From Macrostomum lignano (taxonomy: Eukaryota): a DNA stretch of 64,000 nucleotides. Within the stretch, counting starts at the first letter, position 1, and the number at the start of each line of letters is the position of its first letter. The DNA is taken from NCBI GenBank assembly GCA_002269645.1, contig NIVC01000127.1, forward strand, positions 372,001-436,000. The letters are read 5' to 3'. Position numbers and translations under genes: made by a program. Below the pieces are notes generated by a model. That model saw nothing but the letters and a program-made list of their open reading frames with translations. It did no database searches and was not told the origin of the DNA. Shown piece by piece: positions 3,145 to 61,334 of the stretch.

Positions 3145-4323
3145 TTAATGTTGGCGAAAGGCCACCAACGGAGGTGGCGGCAAGACTTCAAAGTAGCCCA
3201 CTTGGCGAACGGAGCCAAGCCGACGCGTGAGGAAGCGACGCCGTTTTGCGGCGGGACTCGTGCTGCTTCTGCTGCTGTTGCTTCTGCTGCAGTCGCGCTG
3301 GCGCTGCTGAGCAATCACAGGCGCGCGCCGAGAAGCAGTAGAGCGAGTAGGCGTAGGGCAGGTCGTTGCGTTGAATAGTACCGGTGGCGGCGACCTTCTA
3401 CTAGCGTGCTGCTGACTCTGCTGAAGGCGTGGACTGCGGCTGCGCGATCGGCTGGCGATGCGGCTGACCGCCCGGCCGACCAGACGCAAGGCCCGCTGAC
3501 CAAACGAGGCGCTGCGACTTCGGTTACTGCAGGCTTCCTGTTGTTGCTGTTGTTGGATCGGCTCAGTCCACGGCTCAACCCACGGCTCCAGTCGCTCGAT
3601 CCAATTAGTAGGATAAGAGCCGATTTCGTGAGCGAAATCTATTAGCAGGGTCGATATGCCATTGATGCGACCCAACAGCTCCATCGTAGCGTCCATAGGC
3701 TGAATGAGGCTGGGGCCGAGACAGGCACCCAGATTCGGCGCTGGCATACGATTGATTTGGCTGTGCGAAGAAACACGCTTCAGAAACAGGCAGAGATAGC
3801 GCATGGCTGTAAGTTGGCTACTCGGCAATAGCAGACAGCCGAGGCGAAGAATCTTGACTTGCTTCTCCAGGGTTCGCCTGTTTGTTGCCTGTAGCAAAAT
3901 CTTGGACAATTCACGAGGTACAAGGGGCTCTGGAAGCTCTCTCAGCCAGGCTTTTAGCACCGAACAGACATCGTGAACTGGAGTAGCATCTAGTATAGGC
4001 AGTCCCTTGTCCAGCCGCAGTCTTAAATCTCTCTGACGCACCTTCGAGCCTTCAATTCGAAACAATCCTTCGACTTGTAGATGATCGCTGATAAAGGAAC
4101 AGCAGGCAACGAGGACAGTCGGGACTTTACCTATTCCCTCAATCTCGGTGGATGCCTGCTGCAGCAGAGGTCGTCCAAAGCATTGTGTACTTCGTTCTGT
4201 GTAAGCTGGTAGTCTGGCCTTGGGTAGCTGGATGCCTAGCTGAAGCAATTCTTTAACGGCAAGAGCGCAGACCTGCCGCTGCTTTGCTTCGCTGAGTTTT
4301 TCGCAGTAAGTTGTGCCAGACAT
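3145..4323 (-). CDS. ARHGAP11: Intronless RhoGAP-domain protein, ARHGAP11-like
   Basis: 392-aa ORF with RhoGAP motifs FGRPL, VPTVLVACC..HLQVEGLFRIEGS (arginine finger), VCSVLKAWLRELPEPL, NRMPAPNLGACLGPSL. The N-terminal segment resembles ARHGAP11A; basic low-complexity tail. Confidence 0.8.
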   Translation of the reverse strand: MSGTTYCEKLSEAKQRQVCALAVKELLQLGIQLPKARLPAYTERSTQCFGRPLLQQASTEIEGIGKVPTVLVACCSFISDHLQVEGLFRIEGSKVRQRDLRLRLDKGLPILDATPVHDVCSVLKAWLRELPEPLVPRELSKILLQATNRRTLEKQVKILRLGCLLLPSSQLTAMRYLCLFLKRVSSHSQINRMPAPNLGACLGPSLIQPMDATMELLGRINGISTLLIDFAHEIGSYPTNWIERLEPWVEPWTEPIQQQQQQEACSNRSRSASFGQRALRLVGRAVSRIASRSRSRSPRLQQSQQHASRRSPPPVLFNATTCPTPTRSTASRRAPVIAQQRQRDCSRSNSSRSSTSPAAKRRRFLTRRLGSVRQVGYFEVLPPPPLVAFRQH

Positions 4324-5191: not shown

Positions 5192-6889
5192 GAACTACCA
5201 AGAGGGGGGGAAATTCCCCCCCCCCTGACAATTTTTTTCGCTGCGCCAGAACGGAGCAACGCAAGCACACGAAATTTAAGAAAACGGGCTAACTTTTTGT
5301 AGCGCACCTTCTCAAACAAGAATCAAGTCGCCAGCCCTTCGGACCGTCGAGATATTCGACGATTCTGCCAGAAGGTCGGATTTTTCCCATATGTGCTTTG
5401 TATTCAGTACATCCCTGTGCGCCAATCAGCACTGCGCCTCAGTGCAGCCTTGCCAAGTCTCCAAATTTCATCAGCACGTCGAACACATGTGTCTGCATCA
5501 GTTCTGACTTCGTTGGTCACTAGCCTTCACCCAAGTGGAGCTTCTGGACCCTCAACAGCTGTGGCACCAGGTGACTATAGACACCCTGATGCGGATTTCT
5601 CTAGTTTCGCCGATCAAGCCTCGAAAGTGGGCAAGAATCAACCGCCAGAAATTCTCAGCTAGTCTCTCAAGCATTCCGTCATCATCCCGACGCCGTCGGC
5701 TCCTTCAACAGATTACACCAGGTGACTATGGACAGCCTGTTGCAAATATGTCAGGTTTTTCTTATCAAGCTTCAATAATGAGCAAACCTAAACTGCTGGA
5801 CATCCTCAGCTAGTCAGTCAAGCATTCAGCCATCACCCGGACGCCGTCGGCACCTTCAACAGGTGGCACCAGGCGAGTAAGGACACCTGAGCGTGATTTT
5901 TCATCATGCTCTTAACATTTCTGAATCATTAAAAAATGAAAAAACCGATTGAATTTACTGGATTCTTAAAAGCATAACCCTTTCTGGATAAGAATTCGGT
6001 TCAATTATTATAGTTGAATAAACTAAACAGCTTTTCGAATAAAATTTGTATGTAGCTCGTATGCATAAAAGTATGTGTAATAATAATATAAATGTACAGC
6101 AACATAAGTTCAAGCTTAACTATAGCAATGTCCGTGCTTTAAAAATTTTGAGAGCTTCAGAAATGTTAAGAGCATGATGAAAAATCACGCTCAGGTGTCC
6201 TTACTCCCCTAGTGCCACCTGTTGAAGGTGCCGACGGCATCGGGGTGATGGCTGAATGCTTGACTGACTAGCTGAGGATGTCTGGCAGTTGATTTTTGCC
6301 CACTGTCGAGGCTTGATCGGCGAAACTAGAGAAATTCTTATCAGGCTGTCCATAGTCACCTGGTGTAATCTGTTGAAGGAGCCGACGGCGTCGGGATGAT
6401 GACGGAATGCTTGAGAGACTAGCTGAGAATTTCTGGCGGTTGATTCTTGCCCACTTTCGAGGCTTGATCGGCGAAACTAGAGAAATCCGCATCAGGGTGT
6501 CTATAGTCACCTGGTGCCACAGCTGTTGAGGGTCCAGAAGCTCCACTTGGGTGAAGGCTAGTGACCAACGAAGTCAGAACTGATGCAGACACATGTGTTC
6601 GACGTGCTGATGAAATTTGGAGACTTGGCAAGGCTGCACTGAGGCGCAGTGCTGATTGGCGCACAGGGATGTACTGAATACACTAGCACTTATGGAAAAA
6701 TCCGACCTTCTGGCAGAATTGTCGAATATCTCGACGGTCCGAAGGGCTGGCGACTTGATTCTTGTTTGAGAAGGTGCGCAACAAAAAGTTAGCCCGTGTT
6801 CTTAAATTTCGTGTGCTTGCGTTGCTCCGTTCTGGCGCAGCGAAAAAAATTGTCAGGGGGGGGGGAATTTCCCCCCCTCTTGGTAGTTC
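5192..6889. mobile_element. Foldback-type non-autonomous DNA element with ~734-bp terminal inverted repeats
   Basis: 5192-5925 is the reverse complement of 6156-6889 (GAACTACCAAGAGGGGGGG...CATTTCTGAA), with a 230-bp AT-rich spacer. The arms contain a 151-bp subrepeat (caccagg at 5565, 5716, 5867). The mirror ORFs in the track reflect this symmetry. Confidence 0.8.
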
Positions 6890-11266: not shown

Positions 11267-14200
11267 TCAGTTTTTCCTCATAGGCGGCTTCAGCGCCCAG
11301 TTCGGCGCCCCGTCAGGAGGCGGCCGCTGCGACCTGGAGCGCAGCGGATCCCGGATGCAGCGGCCCAGCTGCTGCTTCTGCTTGGTGGTGGCGCAGTTGT
11401 CCATGTAAACCTGGTCAAGCTGGCGTTTCAATCGTTTCACTTCGTCCGATTCCCAGGCGAGCTCGCGGACGCGCAGCTGGTCGGAGCCGCCGGAGCCGCA
11501 CTCCTCGTCGGAGCTGGTGTAGTCCCGGGTGAGGATGACGCGGAACTTCTCCAGCTCGTCCGAGCTGAGGCTGGTGGCCACGAGTTCGAAGCTTTTCTGG
11601 CGTCGGTTCAGCTTCTGGAAGGTCGACGATGAGGATAAGAGGTTGGCGGAGAATGTGATTTGGGGACTCTGATGGGAGAATGGGATTTGGGGATGCTGAT
11701 GGGAGAATGGGATTTGGGATGCAGGTGGGAGCATGGGATTTGGGGTGCTGTTGGGACAATTTGATTTGAGGATTCAGGTGGGAGAATGGGATTTGAGGAT
11801 GATTGTGGGAGAATGGGATTTGGGGATTCTAATGCGAGAATGGGATTTGGGGATGCTTGTGGGAGAGTGGGATTTGAGGATTCTGGTGGGAGAATGGGAT
11901 TTGGGGATGCTGATAAGAGAATGGGATTTGGGGATGCTTGTGGGAGAGTGGGATTTGGGGATTCTAATGCGAGAATGGGATTTGGGGATGCTTGTGGGAG
12001 AGTGGGATTTGAGGATTCTGGTGGGAGAATGGGATTTGGGGATGCTGATGGGAGAATGGGATTTGGGGATGCTTGTGGGAGAGTGGGATTTAAGGATTCT
12101 GGTGGGAGAATGGGATTTGGGGATGCTGATAAGAGAATGGGATTTGGGGATGCTGATGGGAGAATGGGATTTGAGGATTCTAATGCGAGAATGGGATTTG
12201 GGGATGCTGATGGGAGAATGGGATTTGAGGATTCTAATGCGAGAATGGGATTTGGGGATGCTGATGGGAGAGTGGGATTTGAGGATTCTAATGCGAGAAT
12301 GGGATTTTGGGATGCTTGTGGGAGAGTGGGATTTGAGGATTCTGGTGGGAGAATGGGATTTGGGATGCTGATAAGAGAATGGGATTTGGGGATGCTTGTG
12401 GGAGAGTGGGATTTGAGGATTCTGGTGGGAGAATGGGATTTGGGGATGCTGATAAGAGAATGGGATTTGGGGATGCTGATGGGAGAATGGGATTTGAGGA
12501 TTCTAATGCGAGAATGGGATTTGGGGATGCTGATGGGAGAATGGGATTTGAGGATTCTAATGCGAGAATGGGATTTGGGGATGCTGATGGGAGAGTGGGA
12601 TTTGAGGATTCTGGTGGGAGAATGGGATTTGGGATGCTGATAAGAGAATGGGATTTGGGGATGCTGATAAGAGAATGGGATTTGGGGATGCTGATAAGAG
12701 AATGGGATTTGGGGATGCTGATAAGAGAATGGGATTTGGGGATGCTTATGGGAGAGTGGAATTTGAGTATTCTAATGCGAGAATGGGATTTTGGGATGCT
12801 TGTGGGAGAGTGGGGTTTGAGGATTCTGGTGGGAGAATGGGATCTGGGGATGCTGATGGGAGAATGGGATTTGGGGATGCTGATGGGAGAATGAGTTTCT
12901 TCAAGGAATTTAGAATCTCGATTTGGACCGGAGCATATTTATGGAGGAATGGAATGAGAAATGGTTTCGATACGGCAATTATCGGTACCTTACCATCCGG
13001 TTTTGAGTGGTAGTCACAAAGCTAATCAAATAATAATGCAAATTCTATACAATATGACACTGCACTAAAGTAGAAGCGCCCCTAAAGAATCCCACGGGCC
13101 AAGTCTGCAGACTAGAAGTAGATTTTTAATCTGAACAGGCAGATAAGCAAGCAGTATTGGACGATTGGCCAAATGGAATAACTCATTACTGTTAGGCGAA
13201 GCTTGCTGCGCATCTGCTTTCTAAAATCCCAGAAAATGTCAGTCAGCCGGCTAGTTTTAGGCAGTCCTGCGCGCAAAGATAACAGTTGCTTATTGTAAAT
13301 CGGGGCGAATTGAATTTTTGATTTTAAACTTGCACTGCTGGAGCCAGAGAGGACGATAAGTAGAATAGAATGCTTTTATTCCGACAAAATTTTGCTGGAG
13401 GTTAATAGACTAAGCAAGTGAGCAGTCTGATTACATTATGGCGCAGTTTGATCCGAATCTGCTTCCCAAAGTCCCAGAAAATCTCCGACAGTCGGCCAGC
13501 CTTTGGCAGCCCTGCGAAGTTTAAATAATTCATTATAATAATTTGCATTATTAGCTATGGTCTGCGTTGTTTAATTCGGGCAAGGGTGAAGAGTGAACAA
13601 GAGAGTGAACAGAAAGGTGAATAGAATGAACAAGAGAGTGAACAGAAAGGTGAATAGAATGAACAAGAGAGTGAACAGAAAGAAGAAGAGAGTGAACAAG
13701 AGAGTGAACAGAAAGGTGAATAGAATGAACAAGAGAGTGAACAGAAAGGTGAATAGAGTGAACAAGAGAGTGAACAGAAAGGTGAAGAGAGTGAACAAGA
13801 GAGTGAACAGAAAGGTGAATAGAGTGAACAAGAGAGTGAACAGAAAGGTGAATAGAGTGAACAAGAGAGTGAACAGAAAGGTGAAGAGAGTGAACAAGAG
13901 AGTGAACAGAAAGGTGAAGAGAGTGAATGAGAGAAAGAACAAGAGAGTGAACAGAAAGGTGAAGAGAGTGAATGAGAGAGTGAACAGAAAGGTGAAGAGA
14001 GTGAATGAGAGAGTGAACAGAAAGGTGAAGAGAGTGAATGAGAGAGTGAACAAGAGAGTGAACAGAAAGGTGAATAGAATGAACAAGAGAGTGAACAGAA
14101 AGAAGAAGAGAGTGAACAAGAGAGTGAACAGAAAGGTGAAGAGAGTGAACGAGAGAGTGAACAGAAAGGTGAATAGAGTGAACAAGAGAGTGAACAGAAA

Positions 14201-17200
14201 GGTGAATAGAGTGAACAAGAGAGTGAACAGAAAGGTGAAGAGAGTGAATGAGAGAGTGAACAGAAAGGTGAAGAGAGTGAATGAGAGAGTGAACAGAAAG
14301 GTGAAGAGAGTGAATGAGAGAAAGAACAAGAGAGTGAACAGAAAGGTGAAGAGAGTGAATGAGAGAGTGAACAGAAAGGTGAAGAGAGTGAATGAGAGAG
14401 TGAACAAGAGAGTGAACAGAAAGGTGAATAGAATGAACAAGAGAGTGAACAGAAAGAAGAAGAGAGTGAACAAGAGAGTGAACAGAAAGGTGAAGGGAGT
14501 GAATGAGAGTGAACAGAAAGGTGAAGAGAGTGAATGAGAGTGAACAGAAAGGTGAAGAGAGTGAACAGAAAGGTGAAGAGAGTGAACAGAAAGGTGAAGA
14601 GAGTGAACAAGAGAGTGAACAGAAAGGTGAAGAGAGTGAACAAGAGAGTGAACAGAAAGGTGAAGAGAGTGAACAGAAAAGTGAAGAGAGTGAACAAGAG
14701 AGTGAAGAGAGTGGTGAAGAGAGTGAACAAGAGAGTGAAGAGAGTGGTGAAGAGAGTGAACAAGAGAGTGAACAGAAAGGTGAAGAGAGTGAATAAGAGA
14801 GTGAACAGAAAAGTGAAGAGAGTGAACAAGAGAGTGAAGAGAGTGAAGATGAAGAAGTCCTCATTTTGGCTTTAAGCAGTTACAAAAAATTGCAAATACA
14901 AGCACAATGCAGCCCTTCTTGCCAATCCTAGTTGGAAACAGGGATAAAATATACGACTAGAATTGGTCCCACGGTTGGCACACAGGAGAAGGAAAAGCAT
15001 TGAAATCAAAATTACACTTAGGCGAAATTTAGTCCGAATCTGCTTCCCAAAGTCTCTGAAAATCTCGCACATTCGACCGGCTTTTGGTAGCCCTGCGAAA
15101 AAAACGCATTTAGATGGAAGAGATACAGGCTTTGTTTCAATCGTTTTTTGCGCTTGCATTATTGATTCGAGAAGAGCGGTGGATGGTGTAAAAGATAATA
15201 AAGATGCGAAAATGTTACGAAATCGATCTATTGATTTAGACTAGGCTATGCTCAAATAAGTTAGGACAGTTGGATCCTATTCTATGTCTATTCTCAGTGG
15301 TAATCAAGGTCTACTCTCTTGATGATGAAGGGTCTATCCTCAGGGGTAATCAAGGTCTACTCTCTGGGTGATGGTCTATTCTCGGGGGTATTCAAGGTTA
15401 CTCTCTTGATGATGAAGAGTCTATTCTCAGGTGTAATAAAGGTCTACTCTCTGGGTGATAAAGGGTCTATGCTCAAGGTGACGGAGGTCTATTCCCAAGG
15501 TGATAAAGGGTCTAGGCTCAAGGTGACGGAGGTCTATTCCCAAGGTGATAAAGGGTCTATGCTCAAGGTGACGGAGGTCTATTCCCAAAGTGATAAAGGG
15601 TCTAGGCTCAAGGTGACGGAGGTCTATTCCCAAGGTGATAAAGGGTCTATGCTCAAGGTGACGGAGGTCTATTCCCAAAGTGATAAAGGGTCTAGGCTCA
15701 AGGTGACGGAGGTCTATTCCCAAGGTGCTGAGGGTCTATTCTCAGGAATAATGAAGGATGGATTCTGGATGGTGATAGGGCGATTTTGCATAGACTAGAT
15801 TCCAGAATTAACTAAAAAATGGCAGATTTGAGCGCAAGGAAATCAGAAAAAGCAGAAAATGCGATGTAAGTAATATAAATATTAAACTCGTTTCTTTGGC
15901 TTCAGCAAGTGTTATTGGTATTTTTGTTCCAAATTTTTTATTGGAATAAAGTTGATAAATGCCAAAATTTGATACGCAGGCATTAGTAGATTAAAACTAT
16001 GCTTTTCGAAGAATAATATATCCCTTACTAAGCCGCGATATTTGTCGTGCACTTGTCGCTTAAAGTCGCTAAAAATGACGGACAGTCTGCCAGACTTGGG
16101 CAGGTCTACAATATAGCGCATAGTTTTTATGGGCACAAATGCAAGCAAGCTACTGAAAGTAGTACAATTTGGCGGCACTATTGCCTGCTGATTTGGAATG
16201 GAAACGTCTGAAACAAACAGCTACAGTAGAGCTGGGGCTATCCTATTAACTATAGCGAGAACATAACTCACAAGCTGCTTAAACTTGCATCTGGCCTTCA
16301 GGGCAAAATCGGAAAACATGTACAGAATACGACCGCGACAAGGAATCCCTGAAACACAGACGGAGTCAATAATCTCTGAAAACAGTGCAGAGTATATACT
16401 GCTCTTGACCAGCTGTGCTAGAACGACACCATGCTCGTTGGAAACGGCGCTTTTCTTTGGTTCAAAGAATTATTTCCTGGATTACTAAGCACTAAATAAC
16501 TTACAGACAGTCTCATTTTCAAACGACTTGCGGAACGAAAATTTTGAAATATATACAGCAGCCTACACGAGGTGGGGATTCCTTCGGATGGAGGGCGGCG
16601 ACCGCGATTATTTTTTTATATCGAGATTTATATGTGCAGAGATAAGAAAGTCGCAAGTGCTTTGTGACCCGGCAGTAGTAGACTATTACTAGCAGTAGGT
16701 AGTCTCGGGTTTAACTTAAAAAGACAGACTCACGCTAATCCGATATTTGGCCCGAATTTTGGTGCCAAAATTGGAGTGCAAATAGTTAATCCGACTGTCC
16801 TTAGGGAGGTCTGCAATCGATGCCAGTAAAATCAATAAGCGATACGCTTCGGTAGGAGTAAAGAGCGAGGGCCAAGGAAGGAAAACATCGCAAGCTGCTG
16901 AGGCGCTAAGAAATTTGAAAATGCCTACTTAAACTTAGTAGTAGTATGTATGAAATTGCACGTATTTATCAATCTTACAAAGCTTCTAAACCGGAAGCGC
17001 ATTTTCCGGCGCAAATCGATAAATAGGAAGATAGTGCGCGATGCGTAGGGCAGCTCTGAAATCAAGTGTTTTATGGTGCTGCTTTGGGGCCGGAATCTGC
17101 CGCTAAGGTAGACAGGCCTAATTGCCTACTGAAAACGTCGCTAGAGATCAATTTACGGAGTTCAGACAGACGAAGCACTGAACAGGTGATTTTCGTTTAT

Positions 17201-20200
17201 AAGTTTATTAACTTCGATCCAAACTACAGATACTAGAATAACTAGATGGACCACTCAGCACATTTGCGTGTAAGCTACTTGCAGTTCAGTAGAAAGTTAT
17301 ACAGAAGCATTTTAATGTATTTTTCAAGACAAGGCTTATTTATTTTCTATGAAACACTAAAACCTACCCCAAGCTGCCAAGTACATTTCAGTGGGGTGTT
17401 GGCCAATGTACAATACGAGTGAACCAATTAGCAAGTTGTTTACGTCTGCAAGCTTTGTTTGTTTGTTTGGCTTCTAAACTTATCAAAGTCATTTGAGCTT
17501 ATGTTTTCTTCTTTGCTACTGAACTGGAAGTAGAAAGCTGTTTTACTAAATAAATATTCACAAGTGGCCTTATCTAGTTATTTTAGTATTTTGTGCACTA
17601 AACAGAGTAATGATCTTGATTAGACCTCAATACAGAGTTCCATTGCATCGAGATTCACCCCTAGAATCCTAAGCATCCCTTGACAGGAACGGATCCCGAG
17701 ACTTCTACCCTCACAATCAAGCTAATAGCTTGCTAAAACAAAGAAAAACAAGAGAGCCACAACACCAAAAAACCATGACAGCTGCTCATCCTGTCTTACT
17801 GTCTCTCTGTACTTGGCCCTAAGCGCGCTGCGTATGTGACAAAACACCCTGTCAGGCCGGGATTTGTACGGCAAATCTGTAAGCATTAAATATTTTGTTA
17901 AATAATAATTCCTAGCCTCTAATCAGCATTTAGCCGGAACCAAATTAGACGAAATGGATTAGAAACGTCACAAGAGCACCTATTGATTAAATTGAACAGA
18001 AGAGACCAGATTGACTAAATCAAACCAACTTGGGTCTCACATTAAGTTTCAAAGCGTGCCTAGACTCGAAGCGCATCTTAGAGAATGCTGTTGAGATTCG
18101 AAATTCGCTTCGCAGTCCTGAAATTGAACAGGTCTGAACTATGCCGCTCTGCCTTGTTTCAAATTCACTTTTTCTCATTGCTCAGCACTTGTTGGAAGGA
18201 GAAACCGCCATTTGCCCGGCTAATCCCAACTTACTAGCGCTTTGAAACGCTTTTTAGCGTCGGTTCTAAACGAAATGAAAATCATTGAGATCCGCGCCTC
18301 TTTCGGCAGCCCTGCAAACGCGCGCAATTGTTAAGGCGGGGCATTGAGCTTAAACAAATAGGGGAGATCTGAACTCGGCTTTCACAGGCCTGGAAACGGC
18401 TTTGCTTCATTTCTGTTATCATTTAAACAGAAAATATTTAATACTACTGTAAAAATGCGACATCTACTACTTACGCAAAGTTTAAGTCGCGTTCTGGCGT
18501 TTAGTTTAAACGACTTGAATATAAAGTTAATTCGGCCATCTTTAGGCAGCCCTGGAAATCGGCCAATCGGTTGTTGCCTCTTGTATATTAACTAAGAAGA
18601 GATATTTGCATCTGGAAACGCTGCATGCAGCTCAGTGGACTCAAGCTCAAGGCGAATAATAGGGAAGCCAGAACTAGTTAAAGTTTGATTCTTCAGTTAA
18701 GCAAGAGTATATATCCCTATCCGTTGCCCCATCAACACTTACACACAGTTTAAGCCGGGCTCTGGCATTCCGTCTAAAGGACAGAAATATAAAATTAATT
18801 CGGCCCTCTTTTGGCAGACCTAAAAAAACAGATTGCATACGAATAAATTGGATTCTCTTGGCCCAGCAGCTGACAGAGTCAGGCTACATTTTTGTCAGTG
18901 TCAATTGACTTGACCGGAGAATCTGGAAACGCTGCAGCTAAAGTTTAAGCATTCGAATCCATAGCAGCCGGAGTCAGACTGGAGGCGACACGCAATGACA
19001 CATAACTTGATAAATACTAATTAGTCGCAGCACTTACAGAAGTTTTCAATCTAAGCCGCATATCGCGACGGAATTCAGCGAACATGGCGACAGTACGCCT
19101 TAGCAGTTCTACAATTTTTTTCAATAATTTAAATATAGTAACAGTGCACAAATATCCTTTTAATACTACTATCCAGCGGCCTAGTTAGTAGCAGATGCAC
19201 ATGGTGTACTATAAAATGTCAGATCTATAAAAAACTGGGTATAAACAGCTGACAAGGGCAGAATAGCGGGACGTTACCAATTGGTGAAGAAAGACAGCAG
19301 TCAGAACCCCATTTTTATTGAAAATAATAGTTAATTAGGTAATTAATTCATACGCGACTTATATTGATGGCAGCAATTTTATTGCCATTACTCAACAATT
19401 TATTGCTGAATATAATATATAAAAACAAATAATAATATTATTTAAAAGTGAGTGCATTGCTTCGAAAGGTGAAAGATATAGTGTTTTAAAATTATAAATG
19501 AAATTATTGCCTCTGAATTATATGTCATATTTAGTAAATTTTAACATAGATAATTTAATTTGCTCAAGCCAAAGAACTTGCGACGTTTCCAGACCAAGTA
19601 GGCAAGGAGAAAAAGTGACACATTTGGAATTACACAAGCTGCTTATATAATAATTATTAACAGTGCTTGTACTTGCTATCAGTAGTAGTATGCAGAGAAT
19701 ATTGTTTCAAATGCACAAATTCGCAAGCAAGATATTCAACTAGTTAGTAGGCTTAAGGGAGGCGACCAACAAAGAGTTAAAGAGTTAAATTTATTGATTT
19801 TTTTGGTGCACCAATATCTCAGCTTTGCATCCCTGCCAACTTAATAAGCACCAATTCTTATTAAATGCATCATATACACAAAATTATCATTCCGTTTTGG
19901 ACACCCATCGTATTTATCCAGCTATAAAAATAATTGATTTTCAATATCAAGCCGCCAATCTCAAGCCTACACTAATATGCTCAATACTACGGTAGCTAAC
20001 AGCTGCACATTAAGTGCCAAAAAATGCCAAACTCACTCTGCCAGACGTCGTCCGGCCAGCCTTTGCCTTCGGCCATCTCTTTAGCCTTAGCCATGACCAT
20101 GGCGGCAACTTGTTGGTTGGGCTCCGCGGAGAAGCTAAGCGAGAGGACAAGTGGGAATCGACAGGAGCAGGAATTAGCCAATTTAATGCAGCCATACATT

Positions 20201-23126
20201 ATTAATAAACAATGGGGACGGCAACTCACTGAAGGATTTGGGCACGGCAACCCACTGAAGGATTTGGGGACGGCAACCCACTGAAGGATTTGGGGATGGG
20301 GACGGCAACTCACTGAAGGATTTGGGGACGGCAACTCACTGAAGGATTTGGGGATGGGGACGGCAACCCACTGAAGGATTTGGGGATGGGGACGGCAACC
20401 CACTGAAGGATTTGGGGATGGGGACGGCAACTCACTGAAGGATTTGGGGACGGCAACTCACTGAAGGATTTGGGGATGGGGACGGCAACTCACTGAAGGA
20501 TTTGGGGATGGGGACGGCAACTCACTGAAGGATTTGGGGATGGGGACGGCAACTCACTGAAGGATTTGGGGATGGGGACGGCAACCCACTGAAGGATTTG
20601 GGGATGGGGACGGCAACCCACTGAAGGATTTGGGGGTGGGGACGGCAACCCACTGAAGGATTTGGGGATGGGCACGGCAACCCACTGAAGAATTTGGGCA
20701 CGGCAACCCACTGAAGAATTTGGGGATGGGGACGGCAACCCACTGAAGGATTTGGGGATGGGCACGGCAACCCACTGAAGAATTTGGGCACGGCAACTCA
20801 CTGAAGGATTTGGGGATGGGGACGGCAACCCACTGAAGGATTTGGGGATGGGCACGGCAACCCACTGAAGAATTTGGGCACGGCAACCCACTGAAGAATT
20901 TGGGGATGGGGACGGCAACCCACTGAAGGATTTGGGGATGGGGACGGCAACCCACTGTAGGATTTGGGGGTGGGGACGGCAACCCACTGAAGGATTTGGG
21001 GATGGGGACGGCAACCCACTGAAGGATTTTGGGGATGGGGACGGCAACCCACTGAAGTATTTGGGGATGGGGAGGGCAACCCACTGAAGGATTTGGGGAT
21101 GGGGAGGGCAACCCACTGAAGGATTTGGGGATGGGGAGGGCAACCCACTGAAGGATTTGGGGGTGAGGACAGCAACCCACTGAAGGATTTTGGGGATGGG
21201 GACGGCAACCCACTGAAGTATTTGGGGATGGGGAGGGCAACCCACTGAAGGATTTGGGGGTGAGGACGGCAACCCACTGAAGGATTTTGGGGATGGGGAC
21301 GGCAACCCACTGAAGGATTTGGGGATGGGGACGGCAACCCACTGAAGGATTTGGGGGTGAGGACGGCAACCCACTGAAGGATTTGGGGATGGGGAGGGCA
21401 ACCCACTGAAGGATTTGGGGGTGAGGACGGCAACTCACTGAAGGATTTTGGGGATGGGGACGGCAACCCACTGAAGGACTCCGCATTCAAGCTTTACTTA
21501 CGGCATGCTAAAATCGAATAGGTGAGGTCCGTTTCCTTTAAGCATTTTGTAGGCTCGTCGCATGATAGTCTTGCACTCGGGAGGCACGTCGCCGCCGCTT
21601 CCACCGCCGCCGCCGCCGCCGCCGCTGCCGAAGCCGCTGACGCCGGCTCCGGAATAATCGGCGGACAAGTCGAGTCGAGGAATTTTGGCATAGGGGAATC
21701 CGGCGCTAAGACTGTCGTCGTTCAGCTCCTCCGTGATGATGCAATCGTCTTCCTCCTCTTCGTCGGCTTCGTAATCGTCGCCTTCCACCTGTGATTCGAC
21801 ATTCGTACATAACGGCTGCGTTTTAGACACAACATTAATGTGCTCGGGCGATCAAATGACCTTGAGTAATAGCAGAGTCAAATGACCTTGAGTGATAGCA
21901 GAGTCAAATGACCTTGAGTGATAGCAGAGTCAAATGACCTTGAGTGATAGCAGAGTCAAATGACCTTGAGTGATAGCAGAGTCAAATGACCTCGAGTGAT
22001 AGCAGAGTCAAATGACCTTGAGTGATAGCAGAGTCAAATGACCTCGAGTGATAGCAGAGTCAAATGACCTCGAGTGATAGCAGAGTCAAATGACCTCGAG
22101 TGATAGCAGAGTCAAATGACCTTGAGTGATAGCAGAGTCAAATGACCTTGAGTGATAGCAGAGTCAAATGACCTCGAGTGATAGCAGAGTCAAATGACCT
22201 TGAGTGATAGCAGAGTCAAATGACCTCGAGTGATAGCAGAGTCAAATGACCTTGAGTGATAGCAGAGTCAAATGACCTTGAGTGATAGCAGAGTCAAATG
22301 ACCTTCAGTGATAGCAGAGTCAAATGACCTTGAGTGATAGCAGAGTCAAATGACCTTGAGTGATAGCAGAGTCAAATGACCTTGAGTGATAGCAGAGTCA
22401 AATGACCTTGAGTGATAGCAGAGTCAAATGACCTTGAGTGATAGCAGAGTCAAATGACCTTGAGTGATAGCAGAGTCAAATGACCTTGAGTGATAGCAGA
22501 GTCAAATGACCTTCAGTGATAGCAGAGTCAAATGACCTTGAGTGATAGCAGAGTCAAATGACCTTCAGTGATAGCAGAGTCAAATGACCTTCAGTGATAG
22601 CAGAGTCAAATGACCTTCGGTGATAGCAGATTCAAATGACCTTCAGTGACGGTGGCAACACAGTTATAAAACGACTAACCTTAATGGCGCCAAGCGCCGC
22701 GCCCAGCACGCTACTGGCGCCCATGTCGCCAAGTACAGACGCCTTCTCTTCCTTAGTTGAAGCATTGGCGCCACCAGACAAAGACGAGGCGGCAGTTGAT
22801 TCGCGATGCAGCTGCTGATGCTGCGATGGCGGCGGCTGTTGCTGCTGGTGCTGCTGCTGTCCGGACACGCTGGCGACAAGGCCGGCAGCTTCTAGCTCGG
22901 CGAGGCGGTCGCTTCGATCGAATGCCCGACAATACCTGGGCTCCATGGAGTGAACCACGTGAGTGTGCAGATTGCCGATGATTTTCAGTGCAGAGAACAG
23001 TTCGCGCTCGGCCATGGACTCTACGAGCATTTGCGCGTTAGTGATGGTGGATTCGAACAGGGTGAGAGGCGAGAAACTGTTGCCAGGCGGCAGCAGGCTC
23101 GAGTGCGGGCTGAGTACGTCTGCCAT
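11267..23126 (-). CDS. Gene A: uncharacterised C14orf93/DUF4616-like protein with a mutually exclusive exon array. Constitutive exons 23126-22680, 21788-21502, 20134-20037; one variable exon; then 11614-11267.
   Basis: GT-AG sites with consistent phases. Homologous to gene B (FSPLTLFE.TITNAQML.ESMA.REL; LKGNGPHLF.FSMP; KL.RRQKSFEL; RDYTSSDE; LRVR.LAWES; LD; RPPP..P.WAL). The family call rests on recalled similarity of these motifs to C14orf93. Confidence 0.75.
11665..12890. repeat. Intronic G-rich minisatellite, ~21-bp unit gggagaatgggatttggggat-like
   Basis: Tandem units in the last intron of gene A; source of the EWDLG/MGFGD repeat ORFs. Confidence 0.95.
13190..13266 (-). CDS. Gene A variable exon 14: (R)LPKTSRLTDIFWDFRKQMRSKLRLT
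   Basis: 77 nt, gcgcag/gtaatg, phase 1 to phase 0. Confidence 0.85.
13435..13511 (-). CDS. Gene A variable exon 13: (R)LPKAGRLSEIFWDFGKQIRIKLRHN
   Basis: 77 nt, tcgcag/gtaatc, phase 1 to phase 0. Confidence 0.85.
13587..14850. repeat. Purine-rich minisatellite (agagtgaacaag / agagtgaacagaaaggtgaag units)
   Basis: Tandem 9-12-bp modules, between variable exons 12 and 13. Confidence 0.95.
15016..15092 (-). CDS. Gene A variable exon 12: (R)LPKAGRMCEIFRDFGKQIRTKFRLS
   Basis: 77 nt, tcgcag/gtaatt, phase 1 to phase 0. Confidence 0.85.
15290..15760. repeat. Minisatellite, 45-bp unit ctcaaggtgacggaggtctattcccaaggtgataaagggtctatg
   Basis: About 6 near-perfect copies plus degenerate flanks, between variable exons 11 and 12. 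Confidence 0.9.
16029..16105 (-). CDS. Gene A variable exon 11: (N)LPKSGRLSVIFSDFKRQVHDKYRGL
   Basis: 77 nt, ttgtag/gtaagg, phase 1 to phase 0. Confidence 0.85.
16272..16348 (-). CDS. Gene A variable exon 10: (R)IPCRGRILYMFSDFALKARCKFKQL
   Basis: 77 nt, tttcag/gtgagt, phase 1 to phase 0. Confidence 0.85.
16505..16581 (-). CDS. Gene A variable exon 9: (R)IPTSCRLLYIFQNFRSASRLKMRLS
   Basis: 77 nt, weaker aag acceptor, gtaagt donor, phase 1 to phase 0. Confidence 0.75.
16734..16810 (-). CDS. Gene A variable exon 8: (N)LPKDSRINYLHSNFGTKIRAKYRIS
   Basis: 77 nt, ttgcag/gtgagt, phase 1 to phase 0. Confidence 0.85.
16979..17055 (-). CDS. Gene A variable exon 7: (K)LPYASRTIFLFIDLRRKMRFRFRSF
   Basis: 77 nt, tttcag/gtaaga, phase 1 to phase 0. 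Confidence 0.85.
17800..17876 (-). CDS. Gene A variable exon 6: (N)LPYKSRPDRVFCHIRSALRAKYRET
   Basis: 77 nt, ttacag/gtaaga, phase 1 to phase 0. Confidence 0.85.
18041..18117 (-). CDS. Gene A variable exon 5: (R)LRSEFRISTAFSKMRFESRHALKLN
   Basis: 77 nt, tttcag/gtgaga, phase 1 to phase 0. Confidence 0.8.
18235..18311 (-). CDS. Gene A variable exon 4: (R)LPKEARISMIFISFRTDAKKRFKAL
   Basis: 77 nt, ttgcag/gtaagt, phase 1 to phase 0. Confidence 0.85.
18475..18551 (-). CDS. Gene A variable exon 3: (R)LPKDGRINFIFKSFKLNARTRLKLC
   Basis: 77 nt, ttccag/gtaagt, phase 1 to phase 0. Confidence 0.85.
18743..18819 (-). CDS. Gene A variable exon 2: (S)LPKEGRINFIFLSFRRNARARLKLC
   Basis: 77 nt, ttttag/gtaagt, phase 1 to phase 0. 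Confidence 0.85.
19038..19108 (-). CDS. Gene A variable exon 1: (K)LLRRTVAMFAEFRRDMRLRLKTS
   Basis: 71 nt, ttgtag/gtaagt, phase 1 to phase 0, open frame. Confidence 0.75.
19575..19598 (-). promoter_or_regulatory. Putative intronic docking site for RNA-structure-guided exon choice (pre-mRNA CUUGGUCUGGAAACGUCGCAAGUU)
   Basis: Lies between constitutive exon 20037 and the first variable exon. It is in opposite orientation to a motif family recurring upstream of about 10 variable exons. Confidence 0.75.
20213..21478. repeat. Intronic minisatellite, ~32-bp unit ggcaacccactgaaggatttggggatggggac
   Basis: Tandem units in a gene A intron. Confidence 0.95.
21853..22650. repeat. Intronic minisatellite, 26-bp unit gcagagtcaaatgaccttgagtgata
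   Basis: About 30 near-identical copies. Confidence 0.95.
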
Positions 23127-25080: not shown

Positions 25081-34475
<9,395 letters not shown>

Positions 34476-36047
34476 TGCTGAGTTTGTTGCAGAAGCCTGG
34501 TAGAGAGCAGCTGTCAAGTGTTATGATTGGCTTTAGCGGGTTTCTATCGACAGAGGAGCTGGAATTGGCAGCAATGGTTAACCAAAAACTGTCAATCAGT
34601 TATGTCACTGTCATATACATGCATACATGCACAACCTCCAAAATTCGGTCGGCCGTGTGACTTAGTTTTAACAAAATGCGACAGTTTTTGGCCAAAAATG
34701 CGACTTACAGGTAAAAAAAACTGTAAAGCAAATTTAATGCAACTTTGGGTAAACTGCGTTAAACTCTTGCTTGGCCAAATTGCCGTCTTGTGCTTTTGTG
34801 GGGGCTAGTCACTAATTGCAGATTGTAATGCTCTTGGAAATAGCAATTTTACTAATCTATAAGTATTCTATGTAATGTATAAATACACTATATTGTATGC
34901 AATGTTATATTACTAAAAAACTCAACTAATTACAAAACTTGGAAATTGAGTATCCAAGAAAATGGTTGAGTTACTCAACAAAAAATTGTCAAGCCAGATA
35001 CTCAACAGGCACAATAATAAAGTACTATAGTTAATAAGCTAAATATCTGCTAGATAATATTAACTTTAAAGAAACTAACATTAACAATAACCTATAATGT
35101 TATAAATATATAACAGAATTCAAAACTTAATATAGATAATAATATATAAACCTTTACCTTAGCACCATAGTTTAGGTGACATATATGCCAAGATTTCTTG
35201 GTGTACAACAAGGGTCTTATATTTTTAGCATACATAAGGGTATATCCCGGCATATATGACAGTAGATACATGCCAAATAATAAATTTTTGTATTGGCGCA
35301 CAAACCTAGTATACAAACAAGGTTTCATCAATTTTTCTAGCATTAAACCTGGGCATATACTAATATATGATTTGAACTATGGCCTTAGTAGCTATACTCT
35401 GGATCATATAGTATATGCCCAAAAAATTTGGACATGCATTGGCCTTGCATGCCAAAAGTAGGCATGCACAATTGGCATATATCATTCTTACAAAAATCAT
35501 GTATGCACACCTAGCATATACTTTATAAAATCAACACAGAATAGTTATTGTGAAATGGAAAAAAAGATGAAAAAAGTTTATTTTAAGTATAATTTTCAAG
35601 CTTTACAGGTTTTTAAGCTTGTAATAAAGCATTGATTTTCCACTATGAATAATATTGCTGAAAAAGCAGAAAAATAAAATAAATGATTTGCCATTAAGGT
35701 TCCATGGTATTATGCAATTCAAAAATGGAGTACTTATAGGAATGGCGGCTGTGTCTATAATATTTAGCTTATAGGCATGGCTATTATCATCAATATAAAA
35801 TGCATGTTCTATAGGGCTCTCTTATAAGCAAATGGTGGCTTAGTAGATATGTCAATTGCCTTGTGATTGGGTGTAGGAAGGTTTAAATCCCAAGAGGTTG
35901 GTCTTTTTTAATTGAAAATTTTTTAGCAAATAGATTTTTTCCATCTTGAACTTTTTAAGTTTTTTATTAAATTAAAAAAAAAATAAATTAAATTTTTAAT
36001 AAGAATAATTTGCTAAATCCTAGTGCAGCTGCAAATATATATGTAGC

Positions 36048-40174: not shown

Positions 40175-40256
40175 CGACGAGGATGGGATTCGAACCCACG
40201 CGGGGAAACCCCAATGGATTAGCAGTCCATCGCCATAACCACTCGGCCACCTCGTC
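40175..40256 (-). tRNA. tRNA-Ser, anticodon GCT
   Basis: 82-nt GACGAGGTGGCCGAGTGGTTA...CTGCTAA...GGTTCGAATCCCATCCTCGTCG with A/B boxes and long variable arm, followed by a T6 Pol III terminator. Confidence 0.95.
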
Positions 40257-59900: not shown

Positions 59901-60789
59901 ACTGCCGTTTTTATTGCGTCGCTTATGGCTGCCTGGTTGCCGGCTTGGGCCTTGGCCAGCTTCTTCTCCATCAGGCGCTGCAAGGTCAGCAGCCATCTGT
60001 AGAGAATGTCGCGGAGCACCTGCGACGGAGCGGAGGTAGGGAGGCAATGCAAGAGCTTAAGCTCTGACTCTGCGATGAGATATTATGCTCGTGAAGTGAA
60101 TCTATATGAAATCTCATTCTCGGTTTGCAACTAGGAGCGTATATAAGATAAAATCTAACCGTGAGATTTCTATTCTAAAAATCTCACTATGAGATTTTGA
60201 CCCTAGCATGCGATCTCACCAAAAGATAACGACCCTAGAATGAGATCTCACCATGAGATTACGACCCTAGAATGAGATCTCACCATGAGATTACGACCCT
60301 AAAATGAGATCTCACCATGAGATTACGACCCTAGAATGAGATCTAATCATGGGATTACGACCCTCGAATGAGATCTAACCATAATACTCCGATCCTAGTA
60401 TGAGATTTGATCATGAGATTACGACTCTAGAATGAGATATAGATTGCATCACTAGGTGTAAGCATTGTCCCTCTCCAGCCGCACACCTGCAGATAGAGAT
60501 GACCGGGCAGCAGCAGCTCCTGGAACATCAGGCTATCGTTGGATTCAACGGCGCACAGGCCACGTACGCTGGCGTGCAGTTTGCGCAGCATCAGGCAGAG
60601 CAGGTAGAACTTGTCAGCATCCGATTCGCAGTGGGTGAGCACGGAGCGCTGCATCAGATGGCGGCCAAGGTCCAAGTCGCTGGCGTCGGCCGGTACGCGC
60701 AGCTTTTGCCTGGCAACCGGGCGACGGGGAATAAATGTACAGAGAGCTACAGGTGCGGCGTCAGTTGCTGATTGACTAACTAACTAGCC

Positions 60790-60854
<65 letters not shown>

Positions 60855-60921
60855 GCTAACTAACAAACTAACAAACTAACAAACTAACGAACGAACGAAC
60901 GAACTAACTAACTAACTAGCC

Positions 60922-60974
<53 letters not shown>

Positions 60975-60977
60975 GCC

Positions 60978-61032
<55 letters not shown>

Positions 61033-61061
61033 AAACTAACTAACTGACTAACTAACTAGCC

Positions 61062-61094
<33 letters not shown>

Positions 61095-61169
61095 GCTAAC
61101 TAACAAACTAACAAACTAACGAACGAACGAACGAACGAACGAACTAACTAACTAACTAACTAACTAGCC

Positions 61170-61258
<89 letters not shown>

Positions 61259-61261
61259 GCC

Positions 61262-61334
<73 letters not shown>

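What the first reader, a model, noticed from the sequence alone, without database searches (positions are those of the whole stretch)
14931..19598. Docking-site/selector RNA pairing that could enforce one-of-14 exon choice
Seen: one intronic element at 19575-19598 (plus aacttgcgacgtttccagaccaag; pre-mRNA CUUGGUCUGGAAACGUCGCAAGUU) precedes the array. Its reverse complement recurs about 60-105 nt upstream of the acceptors: tctggaaacg 18922 and 18611, ggcctggaaacg 18387, agaaacgtcacaag 17961, ctgaaaacgtcgc 17129, ggaaaacatcgcaag 16880, gaaagtcgcaagt ~16646, tggaaacggcgc ~16439, tggaaacgtc 16199, tggaaaca 14933. Many deviations are G-to-A or T-to-C on the plus strand, which give G-U wobble pairs and keep the pairing. 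The selectors cover overlapping parts of the docking site, so only one could bind at a time. Established: competing docking-selector duplexes control the Drosophila Dscam1 exon 6 cluster. Inference: the same mechanism operates here, probably by convergence. No clear selector was found for exons 1, 5, 12 and 14.
Basis: partly seen in the sequence, partly recalled or inferred. Interest (0 to 1): 0.93.

Follow-up and report, generated by a model that had tools for sequence, protein, structure and literature searches.

The report
Docking-selector RNA exon switch in flatworm
A gene of the flatworm Macrostomum lignano has 14 interchangeable 77-base exons, one intronic "docking" sequence and complementary "selector" sequences in front of nine of those exons; this is the RNA-pairing layout insects use to pick one Dscam exon, it is conserved in two sister genes, and it has apparently evolved independently outside arthropods.

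Summary
The window is Macrostomum lignano DNA. On the minus strand lies an uncharacterised gene with 14 tandem alternative exons (13 of 77 nt, one of 71 nt) between constitutive exons. A single element in the intron before the array (19575-19598) is complementary to sites 58-100 nt upstream of the acceptors of exons 2, 3, 4, 6, 7, 8, 9, 10 and 11. Exons 1, 5, 12, 13 and 14 have no significant partner. The selector core is the most intron-recurrent 8-mer in the array, and its complement occurs only at the docking site. Two paralogous genes elsewhere in the genome carry arrays of 5 and 7 such exons. The only long sequence the three arrays share is a 17-nt docking core, CTGGAAACGTCGCAAGT, and each paralogue has exon-specific selectors at the same distance. 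A paralogue with a single homologous exon has neither element. A 97%-identical second copy shows 2.9% intron divergence but no change in the docking site or selectors. Compensatory covariation and G-U enrichment are weak, and exon usage and function are untested. Verdict: a new, probably convergent member of the Dscam-exon-6-type docking/selector class.

The parts
22680..23126 (-). Constitutive exon 1 of gene A (start codon at 23126)
   Evidence: ORF and GT donor; the assembled CDS is in frame; 92-96% identical to M. lignano proteins P0001 and P0002
21502..21788 (-). Constitutive exon 2
   Evidence: AG/GT boundaries and in-frame assembly
20037..20134 (-). Constitutive exon 3, the last exon before the array; its donor is the one joined to the chosen alternative exon
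19575..19598 (-). Docking site, pre-mRNA CUUGGUCUGGAAACGUCGCAAGUU. The core at 19576-19592 (CTGGAAACGTCGCAAGT) is identical in paralogues A2 and C. It is the only copy in the gene.
   Evidence: no differences from the 97% copy
19038..19108 (-). Alternative exon 1 (71 nt, divergent, no selector)
   Evidence: duplex not significant (21/100)
18920..18936 (-). Selector for exon 2 (UGCAGCGUUUCCAGAUU), 100 nt upstream of the acceptor
   Evidence: dG -24.6
18743..18819 (-). Alternative exon 2 (77 nt)
18610..18625 (-). Selector for exon 3
   Evidence: dG -27.6
18475..18551 (-). Alternative exon 3
18387..18398 (-). Selector for exon 4 (CGUUUCCAGGCC); pairs with the 5' half of the docking site
   Evidence: dG -23.5
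18235..18311 (-). Alternative exon 4
18041..18117 (-). Alternative exon 5 (no significant selector; its closest counterpart in paralogue A2 has one)
   Evidence: (14/100)
17960..17974 (-). Selector for exon 6 (CUUGUGACGUUUCUA); a 13-mer is shared with the selector of A2 exon 3
   Evidence: dG -27.0
17800..17876 (-). Alternative exon 6
17129..17144 (-). Selector for exon 7
   Evidence: dG -22.3
16979..17055 (-). Alternative exon 7
16881..16896 (-). Selector for exon 8 (AGCUUGCGAUGUUUUC); pairs with the 3' half of the docking site; a 12-mer is shared with the selector of C exon 2
   Evidence: dG -25.8
16734..16810 (-). Alternative exon 8 (the exon present in the UniProt model P0001)
16646..16664 (-). 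Selector for exon 9 (CAAAGCACUUGCGAC-UUUC); pairs with the 3' half and flank of the docking site, and with the core if one base is bulged
   Evidence: 5/100; 2/200; dG -25.7
16505..16581 (-). Alternative exon 9
16439..16460 (-). Selector for exon 10, bipartite: CCAAAGAA pairs with the docking flank UUCUUUGG, and GCGCCGUUUCCA pairs with the core
   Evidence: 4/100; 12/200; dG -26.5
16272..16348 (-). Alternative exon 10
16193..16208 (-). Selector for exon 11 (GACGUUUCCA...)
   Evidence: dG -21.8
16029..16105 (-). Alternative exon 11
15016..15092 (-). Alternative exon 12 (GTAAT donor, no selector)
   Evidence: (97/100)
14933..14940 (-). Weak 8-bp selector-like match (UGUUUCCA), cut off from exon 13 by a 1.26-kb minisatellite; not significant
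   Evidence: (9/100)
13435..13511 (-). Alternative exon 13 (GTAAT donor, no significant selector; its closest counterpart, C exon 3, has one)
13190..13266 (-). Alternative exon 14 (GTAAT donor, no selector)
   Evidence: 74/100
11267..11614 (-). Last constitutive exon (conserved C-terminal domain, stop codon)

Best explanation
What it is. Gene A (minus strand, 23126-11267) belongs to an uncharacterised metazoan protein family in Macrostomum lignano. A 26-residue basic segment of the protein is encoded by one of up to 14 tandemly duplicated 77-nt exons.

How it most likely works. In the pre-mRNA, one docking site lies about 440 nt after the exon-3 donor. It can base-pair with any one of at least nine selector sequences, each about 60-100 nt upstream of the acceptor of a variable exon. 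All selectors use the docking core GGAAACG(UCGC), so only one duplex (-22 to -28 kcal/mol) can form per transcript. The duplex loops out every variable exon upstream of the selector. That brings the exon-3 donor next to the acceptor just downstream of the selector, and this exon is included.

Safeguard. Including a second exon shifts the frame and gives a stop codon inside that exon. Skipping all of them also shifts the frame, so errors are unproductive.

Origin. The system predates the duplication that gave paralogues A, A2 and C, and it arose independently of the arthropod Dscam1 system.

Shown: the gene and array structure, the complementarity, its statistical excess, its position, and its conservation.

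Inferred: that the duplex forms in vivo, that it activates the proximal exon, and that unselected downstream exons are kept silent by a repressor or by weak splice sites.
For: 1. Array. There are 14 exons with AG/GT boundaries, 77 nt each (71 nt for the first), and homologous peptides. Only single inclusion keeps the frame.
2. Unbiased discovery. CGTTTCCA is the most intron-recurrent 8-mer, and its complement is found only in the docking intron. A window scan of that intron picks the docking site. 8 of the 10 best complementary sites in 64 kb are in the array.
3. Shuffle tests. 0/100 for seven introns and 4-5/100 for two more. The ungapped test agrees.
4. Selectors match different, overlapping parts of the docking site. 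Exon 4 matches the 5' half, exons 8 and 9 the 3' half, and exon 10 the core plus 3' flank. A shared protein-binding motif would not predict this.
5. Paralogues. A2 (L002) has 5 exons and C (L006) has 7. Each has one docking site with the identical 17-nt core, at 75 and 228 nt from the donor, and selectors 55-117 nt upstream of acceptors. The docking core is the only run of shared 9-mers across the three arrays.
6. Exon-specific selector variants are retained between paralogues: GCTTGCGATGTT in A exon 8 and C exon 2, and CTTGTGACGTTTC in A exon 6 and A2 exon 3.
7. Paralogues without an array have no docking site: gene B in this window, P0011, P0014, and gene D with one homologous 77-nt exon and about 90-nt introns.
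8. Between the window and a 97.3% copy there are 94 differences in 3244 nt of other intron, 4 synonymous differences in 939 exon nt, and 0 in 158 nt of docking site plus selectors (Poisson P about 0.01).
9. Across 20 docking-selector pairs, 66% of cells pair in register against 36-42% when slid. Duplexes are -17 to -30 kcal/mol against -7.5 to -12 for shuffled selectors.
10. The RNA-seq-derived GenBank model P0003 joins exon 3 of A2 to exactly one variable exon and then the last exons. UniProt model P0001 does the same for gene A exon 8.
Against: - Five of 14 exons in gene A (1, 5, 12, 13, 14), and one or two of 5 in A2, have no significant selector. The pairing therefore cannot by itself explain the choice among all exons.
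- Compensatory covariation is weak, because the docking core is invariant: covariation score 0.147 against 0.131 shuffled, 22/500 shuffles as high.
- G-U enrichment is marginal.
- No element was found that would explain silencing of the downstream exons. No conserved sequence lies upstream of the docking site that would correspond to the Dscam locus control region.
- No transcript-level data on exon usage could be obtained here. The NCBI models for A and C stop in the intron before the array.
- The selectors were chosen as best-pairing sites, so the per-pair energies are inflated by ascertainment.
Confidence: 0.8

Rival explanations
1. The pairing is real, but it mainly bridges introns. It shortens the effective distance across long, minisatellite-filled introns and biases the choice among a subset of exons. 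Exclusivity itself would come from the reading frame (77 nt) plus nonsense-mediated decay and from splice-site or repressor effects.
For: Only 9 of 14 exons have selectors. Two-exon inclusion gives a stop codon in the second exon, and skipping shifts the frame. The introns carry minisatellites of up to 1.26 kb.
Against: All selectors compete for one core, which is the arrangement expected for one-at-a-time choice. Most introns within the selector-bearing part of the array are only 117-220 nt and need no bridging. Decay of all multi-exon products would be wasteful for a 14-exon array.
Confidence: 0.12
2. The recurrent CGTTTCC-type element is a binding site for a splicing regulator protein upstream of each exon. 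The docking element would then be an unrelated conserved intronic element that happens to be complementary.
For: The selectors share a short core (GTTTC) at a fixed distance from the acceptor. Covariation is weak.
Against: Complementarity extends beyond the shared core in different directions in different selectors: 12-20 nt, with exon 9 and exon 10 reaching the docking 3' flank and exon 4 the 5' flank. The complement of the core occurs exactly once per gene, in all three genes. The docking site is absent wherever the array is absent.
Confidence: 0.05
3. The repeated motif is a neutral leftover of the tandem duplications that made the array. It has no function, and the docking match is fortuitous or is itself a leftover of an ancestral hairpin.
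For: The exons arose by tandem duplication, and duplication of a hairpin arm is the proposed origin of such systems (PMC6071210).
Against: The surrounding intron sequence has diverged beyond recognition between paralogues, while the 17-nt docking core and the exon-specific selectors persist. There are no substitutions in 158 nt against 2.9% in neighbouring intron between recent copies.
Confidence: 0.03

Closest known systems
Drosophila/arthropod Dscam1 exon 6 cluster docking site and selector sequences (Graveley model; summarised in PMC6071210 and PMC3535345)
   Same: One docking site lies in the intron between the upstream constitutive exon and the first variable exon. One selector lies upstream of each of many tandemly duplicated, equal-length variable exons. 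Each selector is complementary to an overlapping part of the docking site, so only one duplex can form. The docking site is the most conserved intronic element.
   Different: The gene is unrelated (no Ig/FN3 domains and no Pfam domain at all) and the phylum is different (Platyhelminthes). There are 14, 5 and 7 exons rather than 48. Five of the 14 exons lack a selector. The exons are 77 nt, so the frame adds a safeguard. [quoted passage not shown] Whether an hrp36-like repressor acts here is unknown.
Clusters with a docking site downstream of the array: Dscam1 exons 4 and 9, 14-3-3zeta, Mhc, MRP1 of insects (PMC6071210, PMC4691838)
   Same: Competing intronic RNA pairings choose among tandem mutually exclusive exons.
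   Different: Here the docking site is upstream of the array and the selectors are upstream of the exons. No complementary element was found in the intron after the array.
Bidirectional pairing model (Drosophila srp; Apis Dscam exon 4; silkworm exon 9; PMC4691838)
   Same: Long-range intronic pairing controls mutually exclusive exons.
   Different: That model uses pairs of complementary sequences flanking each exon, not a common docking site. No elements flanking individual exons were found here.
Mammalian two-exon competing structures, for example ATE1 exons 7a/7b (PMC7797038)
   Same: Conserved intronic elements compete for one partner.
   Different: Those clusters have two exons and more complex multi-element structures. 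Here one site serves nine or more selectors.
Ivanov and Pervouchine duplication model for the origin of competing structures (PMC6071210)
   Same: Exon plus upstream selector behaves as the duplication unit. The single docking site stays outside the unit. A single-exon paralogue (gene D) shows a state without an array.
   Different: Gene D has no residual hairpin, so the ancestral stem-loop that the model postulates is not visible.

Membership tests
Docking-site/selector competing RNA structures, Dscam1 exon 6 type | Tandem array of homologous, equal-length alternative exons between constitutive exons | tested here: met
   14 exons (13 of 77 nt, one of 71 nt), AG/GT boundaries, homologous peptides, in-frame assembly with the flanking exons
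Docking-site/selector competing RNA structures, Dscam1 exon 6 type | A single docking site in the intron between the upstream constitutive exon and the first variable exon | tested here: met
   Unique copy at 19575-19598. No other sense match of 8 nt or more in the array. The same holds in paralogues A2 and C.
Docking-site/selector competing RNA structures, Dscam1 exon 6 type | Selectors upstream of variable exons, complementary to the docking site beyond chance | tested here: met
   9 exons in A, 3-4 in A2 and 7 in C. Shuffle tests give 0/100 to 5/100. 8 of the 10 best sites in 64 kb lie in the array.
Docking-site/selector competing RNA structures, Dscam1 exon 6 type | Every variable exon has its own selector | tested here: not met
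   Exons 1, 5, 12, 13 and 14 of gene A, and exon 1 of A2, have no significant partner. The closest counterparts of exons 5 and 13 in A2 and C do have one, which suggests loss.
Docking-site/selector competing RNA structures, Dscam1 exon 6 type | Selectors overlap on the docking site, so only one can pair at a time | tested here: met
   All 20 predicted duplexes include the docking core GGAAAC; exon 9 of A and exon 5 of A2 need a bulge to do so
Docking-site/selector competing RNA structures, Dscam1 exon 6 type | Docking site and selectors conserved while the surrounding intron diverges | tested here: met
   The 17-nt core is the only shared run of 9-mers across the three paralogous arrays. 0/158 differences against 94/3244 between the 97% copies.
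Docking-site/selector competing RNA structures, Dscam1 exon 6 type | Compensatory covariation between docking site and selectors | tested here: inconclusive
   The docking core is invariant. The flanks give 9 pairs with changes on both sides, but the score is barely above shuffles (22/500).
Docking-site/selector competing RNA structures, Dscam1 exon 6 type | Exactly one variable exon per mRNA | not testable with these tools
   Only two models with a single variable exon are on record (P0003, RNA-seq-derived; P0001). No read-level data were available.
Docking-site/selector competing RNA structures, Dscam1 exon 6 type | Exon choice depends on the pairing (disruption and compensatory rescue) | not testable with these tools
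   Needs minigenes or transgenes
Docking-site/selector competing RNA structures, Dscam1 exon 6 type | [quoted passage not shown] | not tested
   No conserved sequence lies upstream of the docking site among the paralogues. Structure was not analysed.
Dscam1 gene family (homology) | Ig/FN3 cell-adhesion protein orthologous to Dscam | tested here: not met
   No Pfam domain. Relatives are uncharacterised proteins of flatworm, echinoderms, a hemichordate, amphioxus and a bivalve. Any similarity of mechanism is convergent.
Downstream-docking clusters (Dscam exons 4 and 9, 14-3-3zeta, Mhc) | Docking site in the intron after the cluster, with selectors downstream of the exons | tested here: not met
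   The docking site is upstream. No recurrent or complementary element was found in or toward the last intron.
Steric or spliceosome-incompatibility mechanisms of mutual exclusion | Intron between alternative exons too short to splice, or mixed U2/U12 splice sites | tested here: not met
   Introns between variable exons are 117-1504 nt, while introns of about 85-93 nt are spliced in paralogue D. All sites are GT-AG.
Frame/NMD safeguard | Exon length not a multiple of three, so that double inclusion or skipping is unproductive | tested here: met
   77 nt. Joining exons 2 and 3 gives a stop codon in the second exon. Skipping all exons replaces the conserved C-terminal domain.

The most novel reading that the evidence does not exclude
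A Dscam-exon-6-type docking/selector system evolved independently in a flatworm, in a gene family of unknown function. It is older than the split of three paralogous genes, and exon-specific selectors have been kept since that split. It also offers a natural experiment: exons that have lost their selector (1, 5, 12-14) sit beside exons that kept theirs. This would be the first large docking/selector array outside arthropods, in an animal where transgenesis is available.
Probability: 0.7. Interest if true: 0.75.

Novelty: new member of a known kind. Interest (0 to 1): 0.7.

Why it matters
Large docking/selector arrays have so far been described in arthropod genes: Dscam1 above all, and a few other insect genes (PMC6071210, PMC3535345). 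Full-text searches found no paper that links selector sequences with flatworms or other lophotrochozoans.

An independent origin in a flatworm, in an unrelated gene, would show that competing RNA pairing is a general and repeatedly evolvable answer to the one-of-many exon problem. The duplication model of Ivanov and Pervouchine predicts exactly this.

The system is small: 5, 7 and 14 exons, with mostly short introns. It exists in three diverged copies. Some of its exons have naturally lost their selector. The host animal can be made transgenic (PMC5730564). Open questions about Dscam could therefore be tested here directly, above all how unselected downstream exons are silenced and what sets the usage frequency of each exon.

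The finding also points to a protein family with a hypervariable basic helical segment whose function is unknown.

Tried and rejected
- Pfam on the gene's exons: no domain.
- AlphaFold model of paralogue P0003: mean pLDDT 58. The variable segment is helix-break-helix, and Foldseek against the PDB gave no match at E<=0.001. Protein function stays unknown.
- Profile search with all 26 exon-junction peptides, to find further isoforms: no hits, not even the known P0001, so it is uninformative.
- Search for a second docking site or exon-flanking pairings that could serve exons 12-14: no recurrent k-mers and no convincing duplexes. duplexfold on long segments gave only meaningless extended structures.
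- Docking-like sense copies as decoys: none of 8 nt or more in A or C, and one 9-mer in A2 at 12860.
- G-U enrichment: marginal.
- Formal covariation: weak.
- Local folding: the docking site is neither clearly exposed nor sequestered, with P(unpaired) 0.33-0.48 against a background of 0.50-0.56.
- Rfam: nothing in the array.
- Gene B in this window, as a possible second array: it has a single non-homologous exon and no docking site.
- The first attempt at dinucleotide shuffling timed out and was replaced.
- A DNA-level role, such as recombination signals, was considered and dropped: nothing supports it, and the elements are strand-specific in the RNA sense.

Full report
**What the window is.** A protein assembled from the minus-strand exons matches only Macrostomum lignano proteins. 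The best matches are 92-96% identical. The window is 100% identical to GenBank contig NIVC01000127.1 of the Mlig_3_7 assembly over the stretch compared (locus L003). The DNA is therefore from a free-living flatworm, not an insect. Almost every intron carries minisatellites (45 arrays in 64 kb).

**The gene.** On the minus strand I reconstructed gene A.
- Exon 1 is 23126-22680, exon 2 is 21788-21502 and exon 3 is 20134-20037.
- Then come 14 alternative exons: 19108-19038, 18819-18743, 18551-18475, 18311-18235, 18117-18041, 17876-17800, 17055-16979, 16810-16734, 16581-16505, 16348-16272, 16105-16029, 15092-15016, 13511-13435 and 13266-13190.
- The last exon is 11614-11267.

All alternative exons have AG/GT boundaries. 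Thirteen are 77 nt and the first is 71 nt. They encode homologous basic peptides of the form (R/N)LPKxGRxxxIFxxFxxxxRxKxRxx. With any one of them the CDS is in frame and gives 416-418 residues. With none the frame shifts and the conserved C-terminal domain is lost. With exons 2 and 3 together a stop codon appears inside the second exon. Introns between variable exons are 117-1504 nt, while a paralogue splices introns of about 90 nt. Steric hindrance therefore cannot explain exclusivity.

**Check of the observation.** The plus strand at 19575-19598 reads AACTTGCGACGTTTCCAGACCAAG. Each listed selector is present at or next to the stated coordinate.
- All five CGTTTCC on the minus strand of the 64-kb window lie in the array.
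- Among all 8-mers, CGTTTCCA is the one found in the most array introns (five). Its reverse complement is found only in the intron before the array.
- I scanned every 26-nt window of that intron against the 160 nt upstream of each acceptor. The docking site came out as the best window, with 9-10 of 13 introns at or below -20 kcal/mol.
- Duplex energies against 100 dinucleotide-preserving shuffles of each intron were beaten 0 times for exons 2, 3, 4, 6, 7, 8 and 11. They were beaten 5 and 4 times for exons 9 and 10, and 21, 14, 97, 9 and 74 times for exons 1, 5, 12, 13 and 14. An ungapped scoring scheme agrees.
- In the whole window, 8 of the 10 RNA-sense sites with an ungapped score of 27 or more lie within 2.8 kb of the array, each upstream of an exon.

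The significant selectors lie 58-100 nt upstream of their acceptors. It is separated from exon 13 by a 1.26-kb minisatellite.

**Why RNA pairing, not a shared protein motif.** The selectors do not simply repeat one motif. Exon 4's selector (CGUUUCCAGGCC) covers the 5' half of the docking site. Those of exons 6-8 cover the core plus the 3' half. Exon 9's covers GUCGCAAGUUCUUUG. Exon 10's is bipartite, with CCAAAGAA pairing to the 3' flank UUCUUUGG. All predicted duplexes still include the core GGAAAC, so only one can form at a time. Their energies are -17 to -30 kcal/mol, against -7.5 to -12 for shuffled selectors (these values are inflated by ascertainment).

**Comparative evidence.** Most M. 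lignano paralogues of this family have a single, non-homologous exon at the array position and no docking motif. These include gene B in this window (34517-25081). Paralogue D (L007) has one homologous 77-nt exon, introns of about 90 nt, and no docking site.

Two paralogues have arrays.
- A2 (L002, 77% protein identity) has 5 variable exons. Its docking site UCCUGGAAACGUCGCAAGUUCU lies 75 nt after the donor. Its selectors GCUUGUGACGUUUCU, ACUUGUGACGUUUC and UUUGCGACGUUUUCA lie 55-80 nt upstream of acceptors.
- C (L006) has 7 variable exons. Its docking site AGUCUGGAAACGUCGCAAGU lies 228 nt after the donor. A selector precedes every exon.

I compared the three arrays (8.4, 5.0 and 4.0 kb) for shared 9-mers. 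The only run is the 17-nt docking core CTGGAAACGTCGCAAGT, followed by selector words. Everything else is isolated chance 9-mers.

Exon-specific selector variants are kept between paralogues. GCTTGCGATGTT is shared by A exon 8 and C exon 2, and CTTGTGACGTTTC by A exon 6 and A2 exon 3. Both include their wobble-making substitutions. The closest counterparts of A exons 5 and 13 in A2 and C do have selectors, so their absence in gene A looks like loss.

A 97.3%-identical second copy of gene A (L001) reflects the duplicated chromosome of the sequenced DV1 line (PMC5730564). It differs at 94 of 3244 other intron positions and at 4 of 939 exon positions, with identical peptides. It differs at none of the 158 docking and selector positions. 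The expected number at the intron rate is 4.6, which gives P of about 0.01.

**What is weak.** Formal covariation on 20 docking-selector pairs is barely above shuffles, because the docking core never varies. 66% of cells pair in register against 36-42% when slid, and the covariation score is reached by 22 of 500 shuffles. Five exons lack selectors. I found no second docking site, no exon-flanking pairings and no conserved element in the last intron. How downstream exons are skipped is therefore unexplained.

Transcript evidence is thin. The GenBank annotation derives from a genome-guided RNA-seq assembly (PMC5730564). Its model P0003 joins exon 3 of A2 to exactly one variable exon. UniProt model P0001 does the same for gene A exon 8. 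The GenBank models for A and C simply end in the intron before the array.

**Mechanism proposed.** One docking site pairs with one selector. This loops out the upstream variable exons and brings the exon-3 donor next to the acceptor that follows the selector. That exon is spliced in. The 77-nt length makes double inclusion or skipping unproductive. The steps shown are the anatomy, the complementarity, its statistical excess, its position and its conservation. The steps inferred are duplex formation in vivo, activation of the proximal exon, and repression of the rest.

**Comparison with known systems.** The layout is that of the Dscam1 exon 6 cluster: the docking site lies upstream of the array, the selectors lie upstream of each exon, and the selectors overlap on the docking site (PMC6071210, PMC3535345). 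It is not the downstream-docking layout of Dscam exons 4 and 9, 14-3-3zeta or Mhc, and not the bidirectional srp layout. The gene is not related to Dscam. It has no Pfam domain. A full HMMER profile search finds 534 relatives at E<=0.001. The ten whose records I looked up are unnamed or uncharacterised proteins; besides one further M. lignano paralogue, the named sources are a starfish, a sea cucumber, a hemichordate, amphioxus and a freshwater mussel. A structure model gave no fold match.

Full-text searches found no report of docking/selector control in Macrostomum, flatworms or other lophotrochozoans. I therefore file this as a new, convergent member of a known kind. It has one departure from the type: a third of the exons have no selector.

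**Verdict.** The interest is substantial for the splicing field, because the system is small, exists in three diverged copies, and sits in a transgenic-capable animal.

Noticed in passing
window 19331-19346 (-), 32719-32734 (-); L002 12507-12522 and 5266-5281; L006 12017-12032: A 16-nt palindrome-like element, TTAATTAyCTAATTAA, is conserved in the intron after exon 3 of family members both with arrays (A, A2, C) and without (gene B and the B-like neighbour of A2). Shuffles of the window predict no matches. It is not specific to arrays. It could be an intronic enhancer (paired TAATTA homeodomain-type sites) or an RNA element.
   Followed up: partly
window 25081-34517 (-): Gene B is a tandem paralogue of gene A (protein P0006). 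It has a single non-homologous exon (31891-31796) where gene A has its array. The same B-then-A arrangement appears to recur upstream of A2 in L002.
   Followed up: partly
window 26757-31324 (+): An apparently intact non-LTR retrotransposon lies inside an intron of gene B. ORF1 is 372 aa. ORF2 is 1149 aa with endonuclease, reverse transcriptase and RNase H domains.
   Followed up: partly
window 13190-15092 (-): Alternative exons 12-14 form a subgroup. Their peptides are very similar, all three have GTAAT donors instead of GTAAG/GTGAG, and none has a selector. Large minisatellites lie in the flanking introns (15286-15744, 13585-14843). How they are chosen, if they are used, is unexplained.
   Followed up: partly
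L002 12860-12868: A second 9-nt copy of part of the docking sequence (AACGTCGCA) lies 144 nt upstream of the first variable exon of A2, an exon without a clear selector. About 0.02 such matches are expected by chance in 5 kb.
   Followed up: no
window, whole; for example 11648-12893, 13585-14843, 20212-21478, 21852-22649: Minisatellite density is extreme: 45 Tandem Repeats Finder rows in 64 kb (overlapping rows can describe one array), with periods of 17-150 nt. The ones I placed against gene models lie in introns. They produce long spurious ORFs on both strands.
   Followed up: no
window about 5393-5813 (+) and 6268-6664 (-): An inverted duplication: ORFs on opposite strands encode near-identical peptides.
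   Followed up: no
window 40175-40256 (-): A tRNA gene (Rfam RF00005, 64 bits).
   Followed up: no
window 3145-4323 (-), 42692-43273 (-), 49008-49796 (-), 55093-61916 (-): Neighbouring genes: a RhoGAP-domain protein, a two-pore-type potassium channel exon, a WD40 protein, and the second-largest subunit of an RNA polymerase (Rpb2 domains 3 and 6) whose introns are filled with minisatellites.
   Followed up: partly
L001 10001-11994; L006 10001-11689: The GenBank gene models for gene A (P0002) and gene C (P0010) end by reading through the exon-3 donor into the intron before the array. Either transcript assembly broke at the array, or intron-retaining or prematurely terminated transcripts exist.
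   Followed up: no
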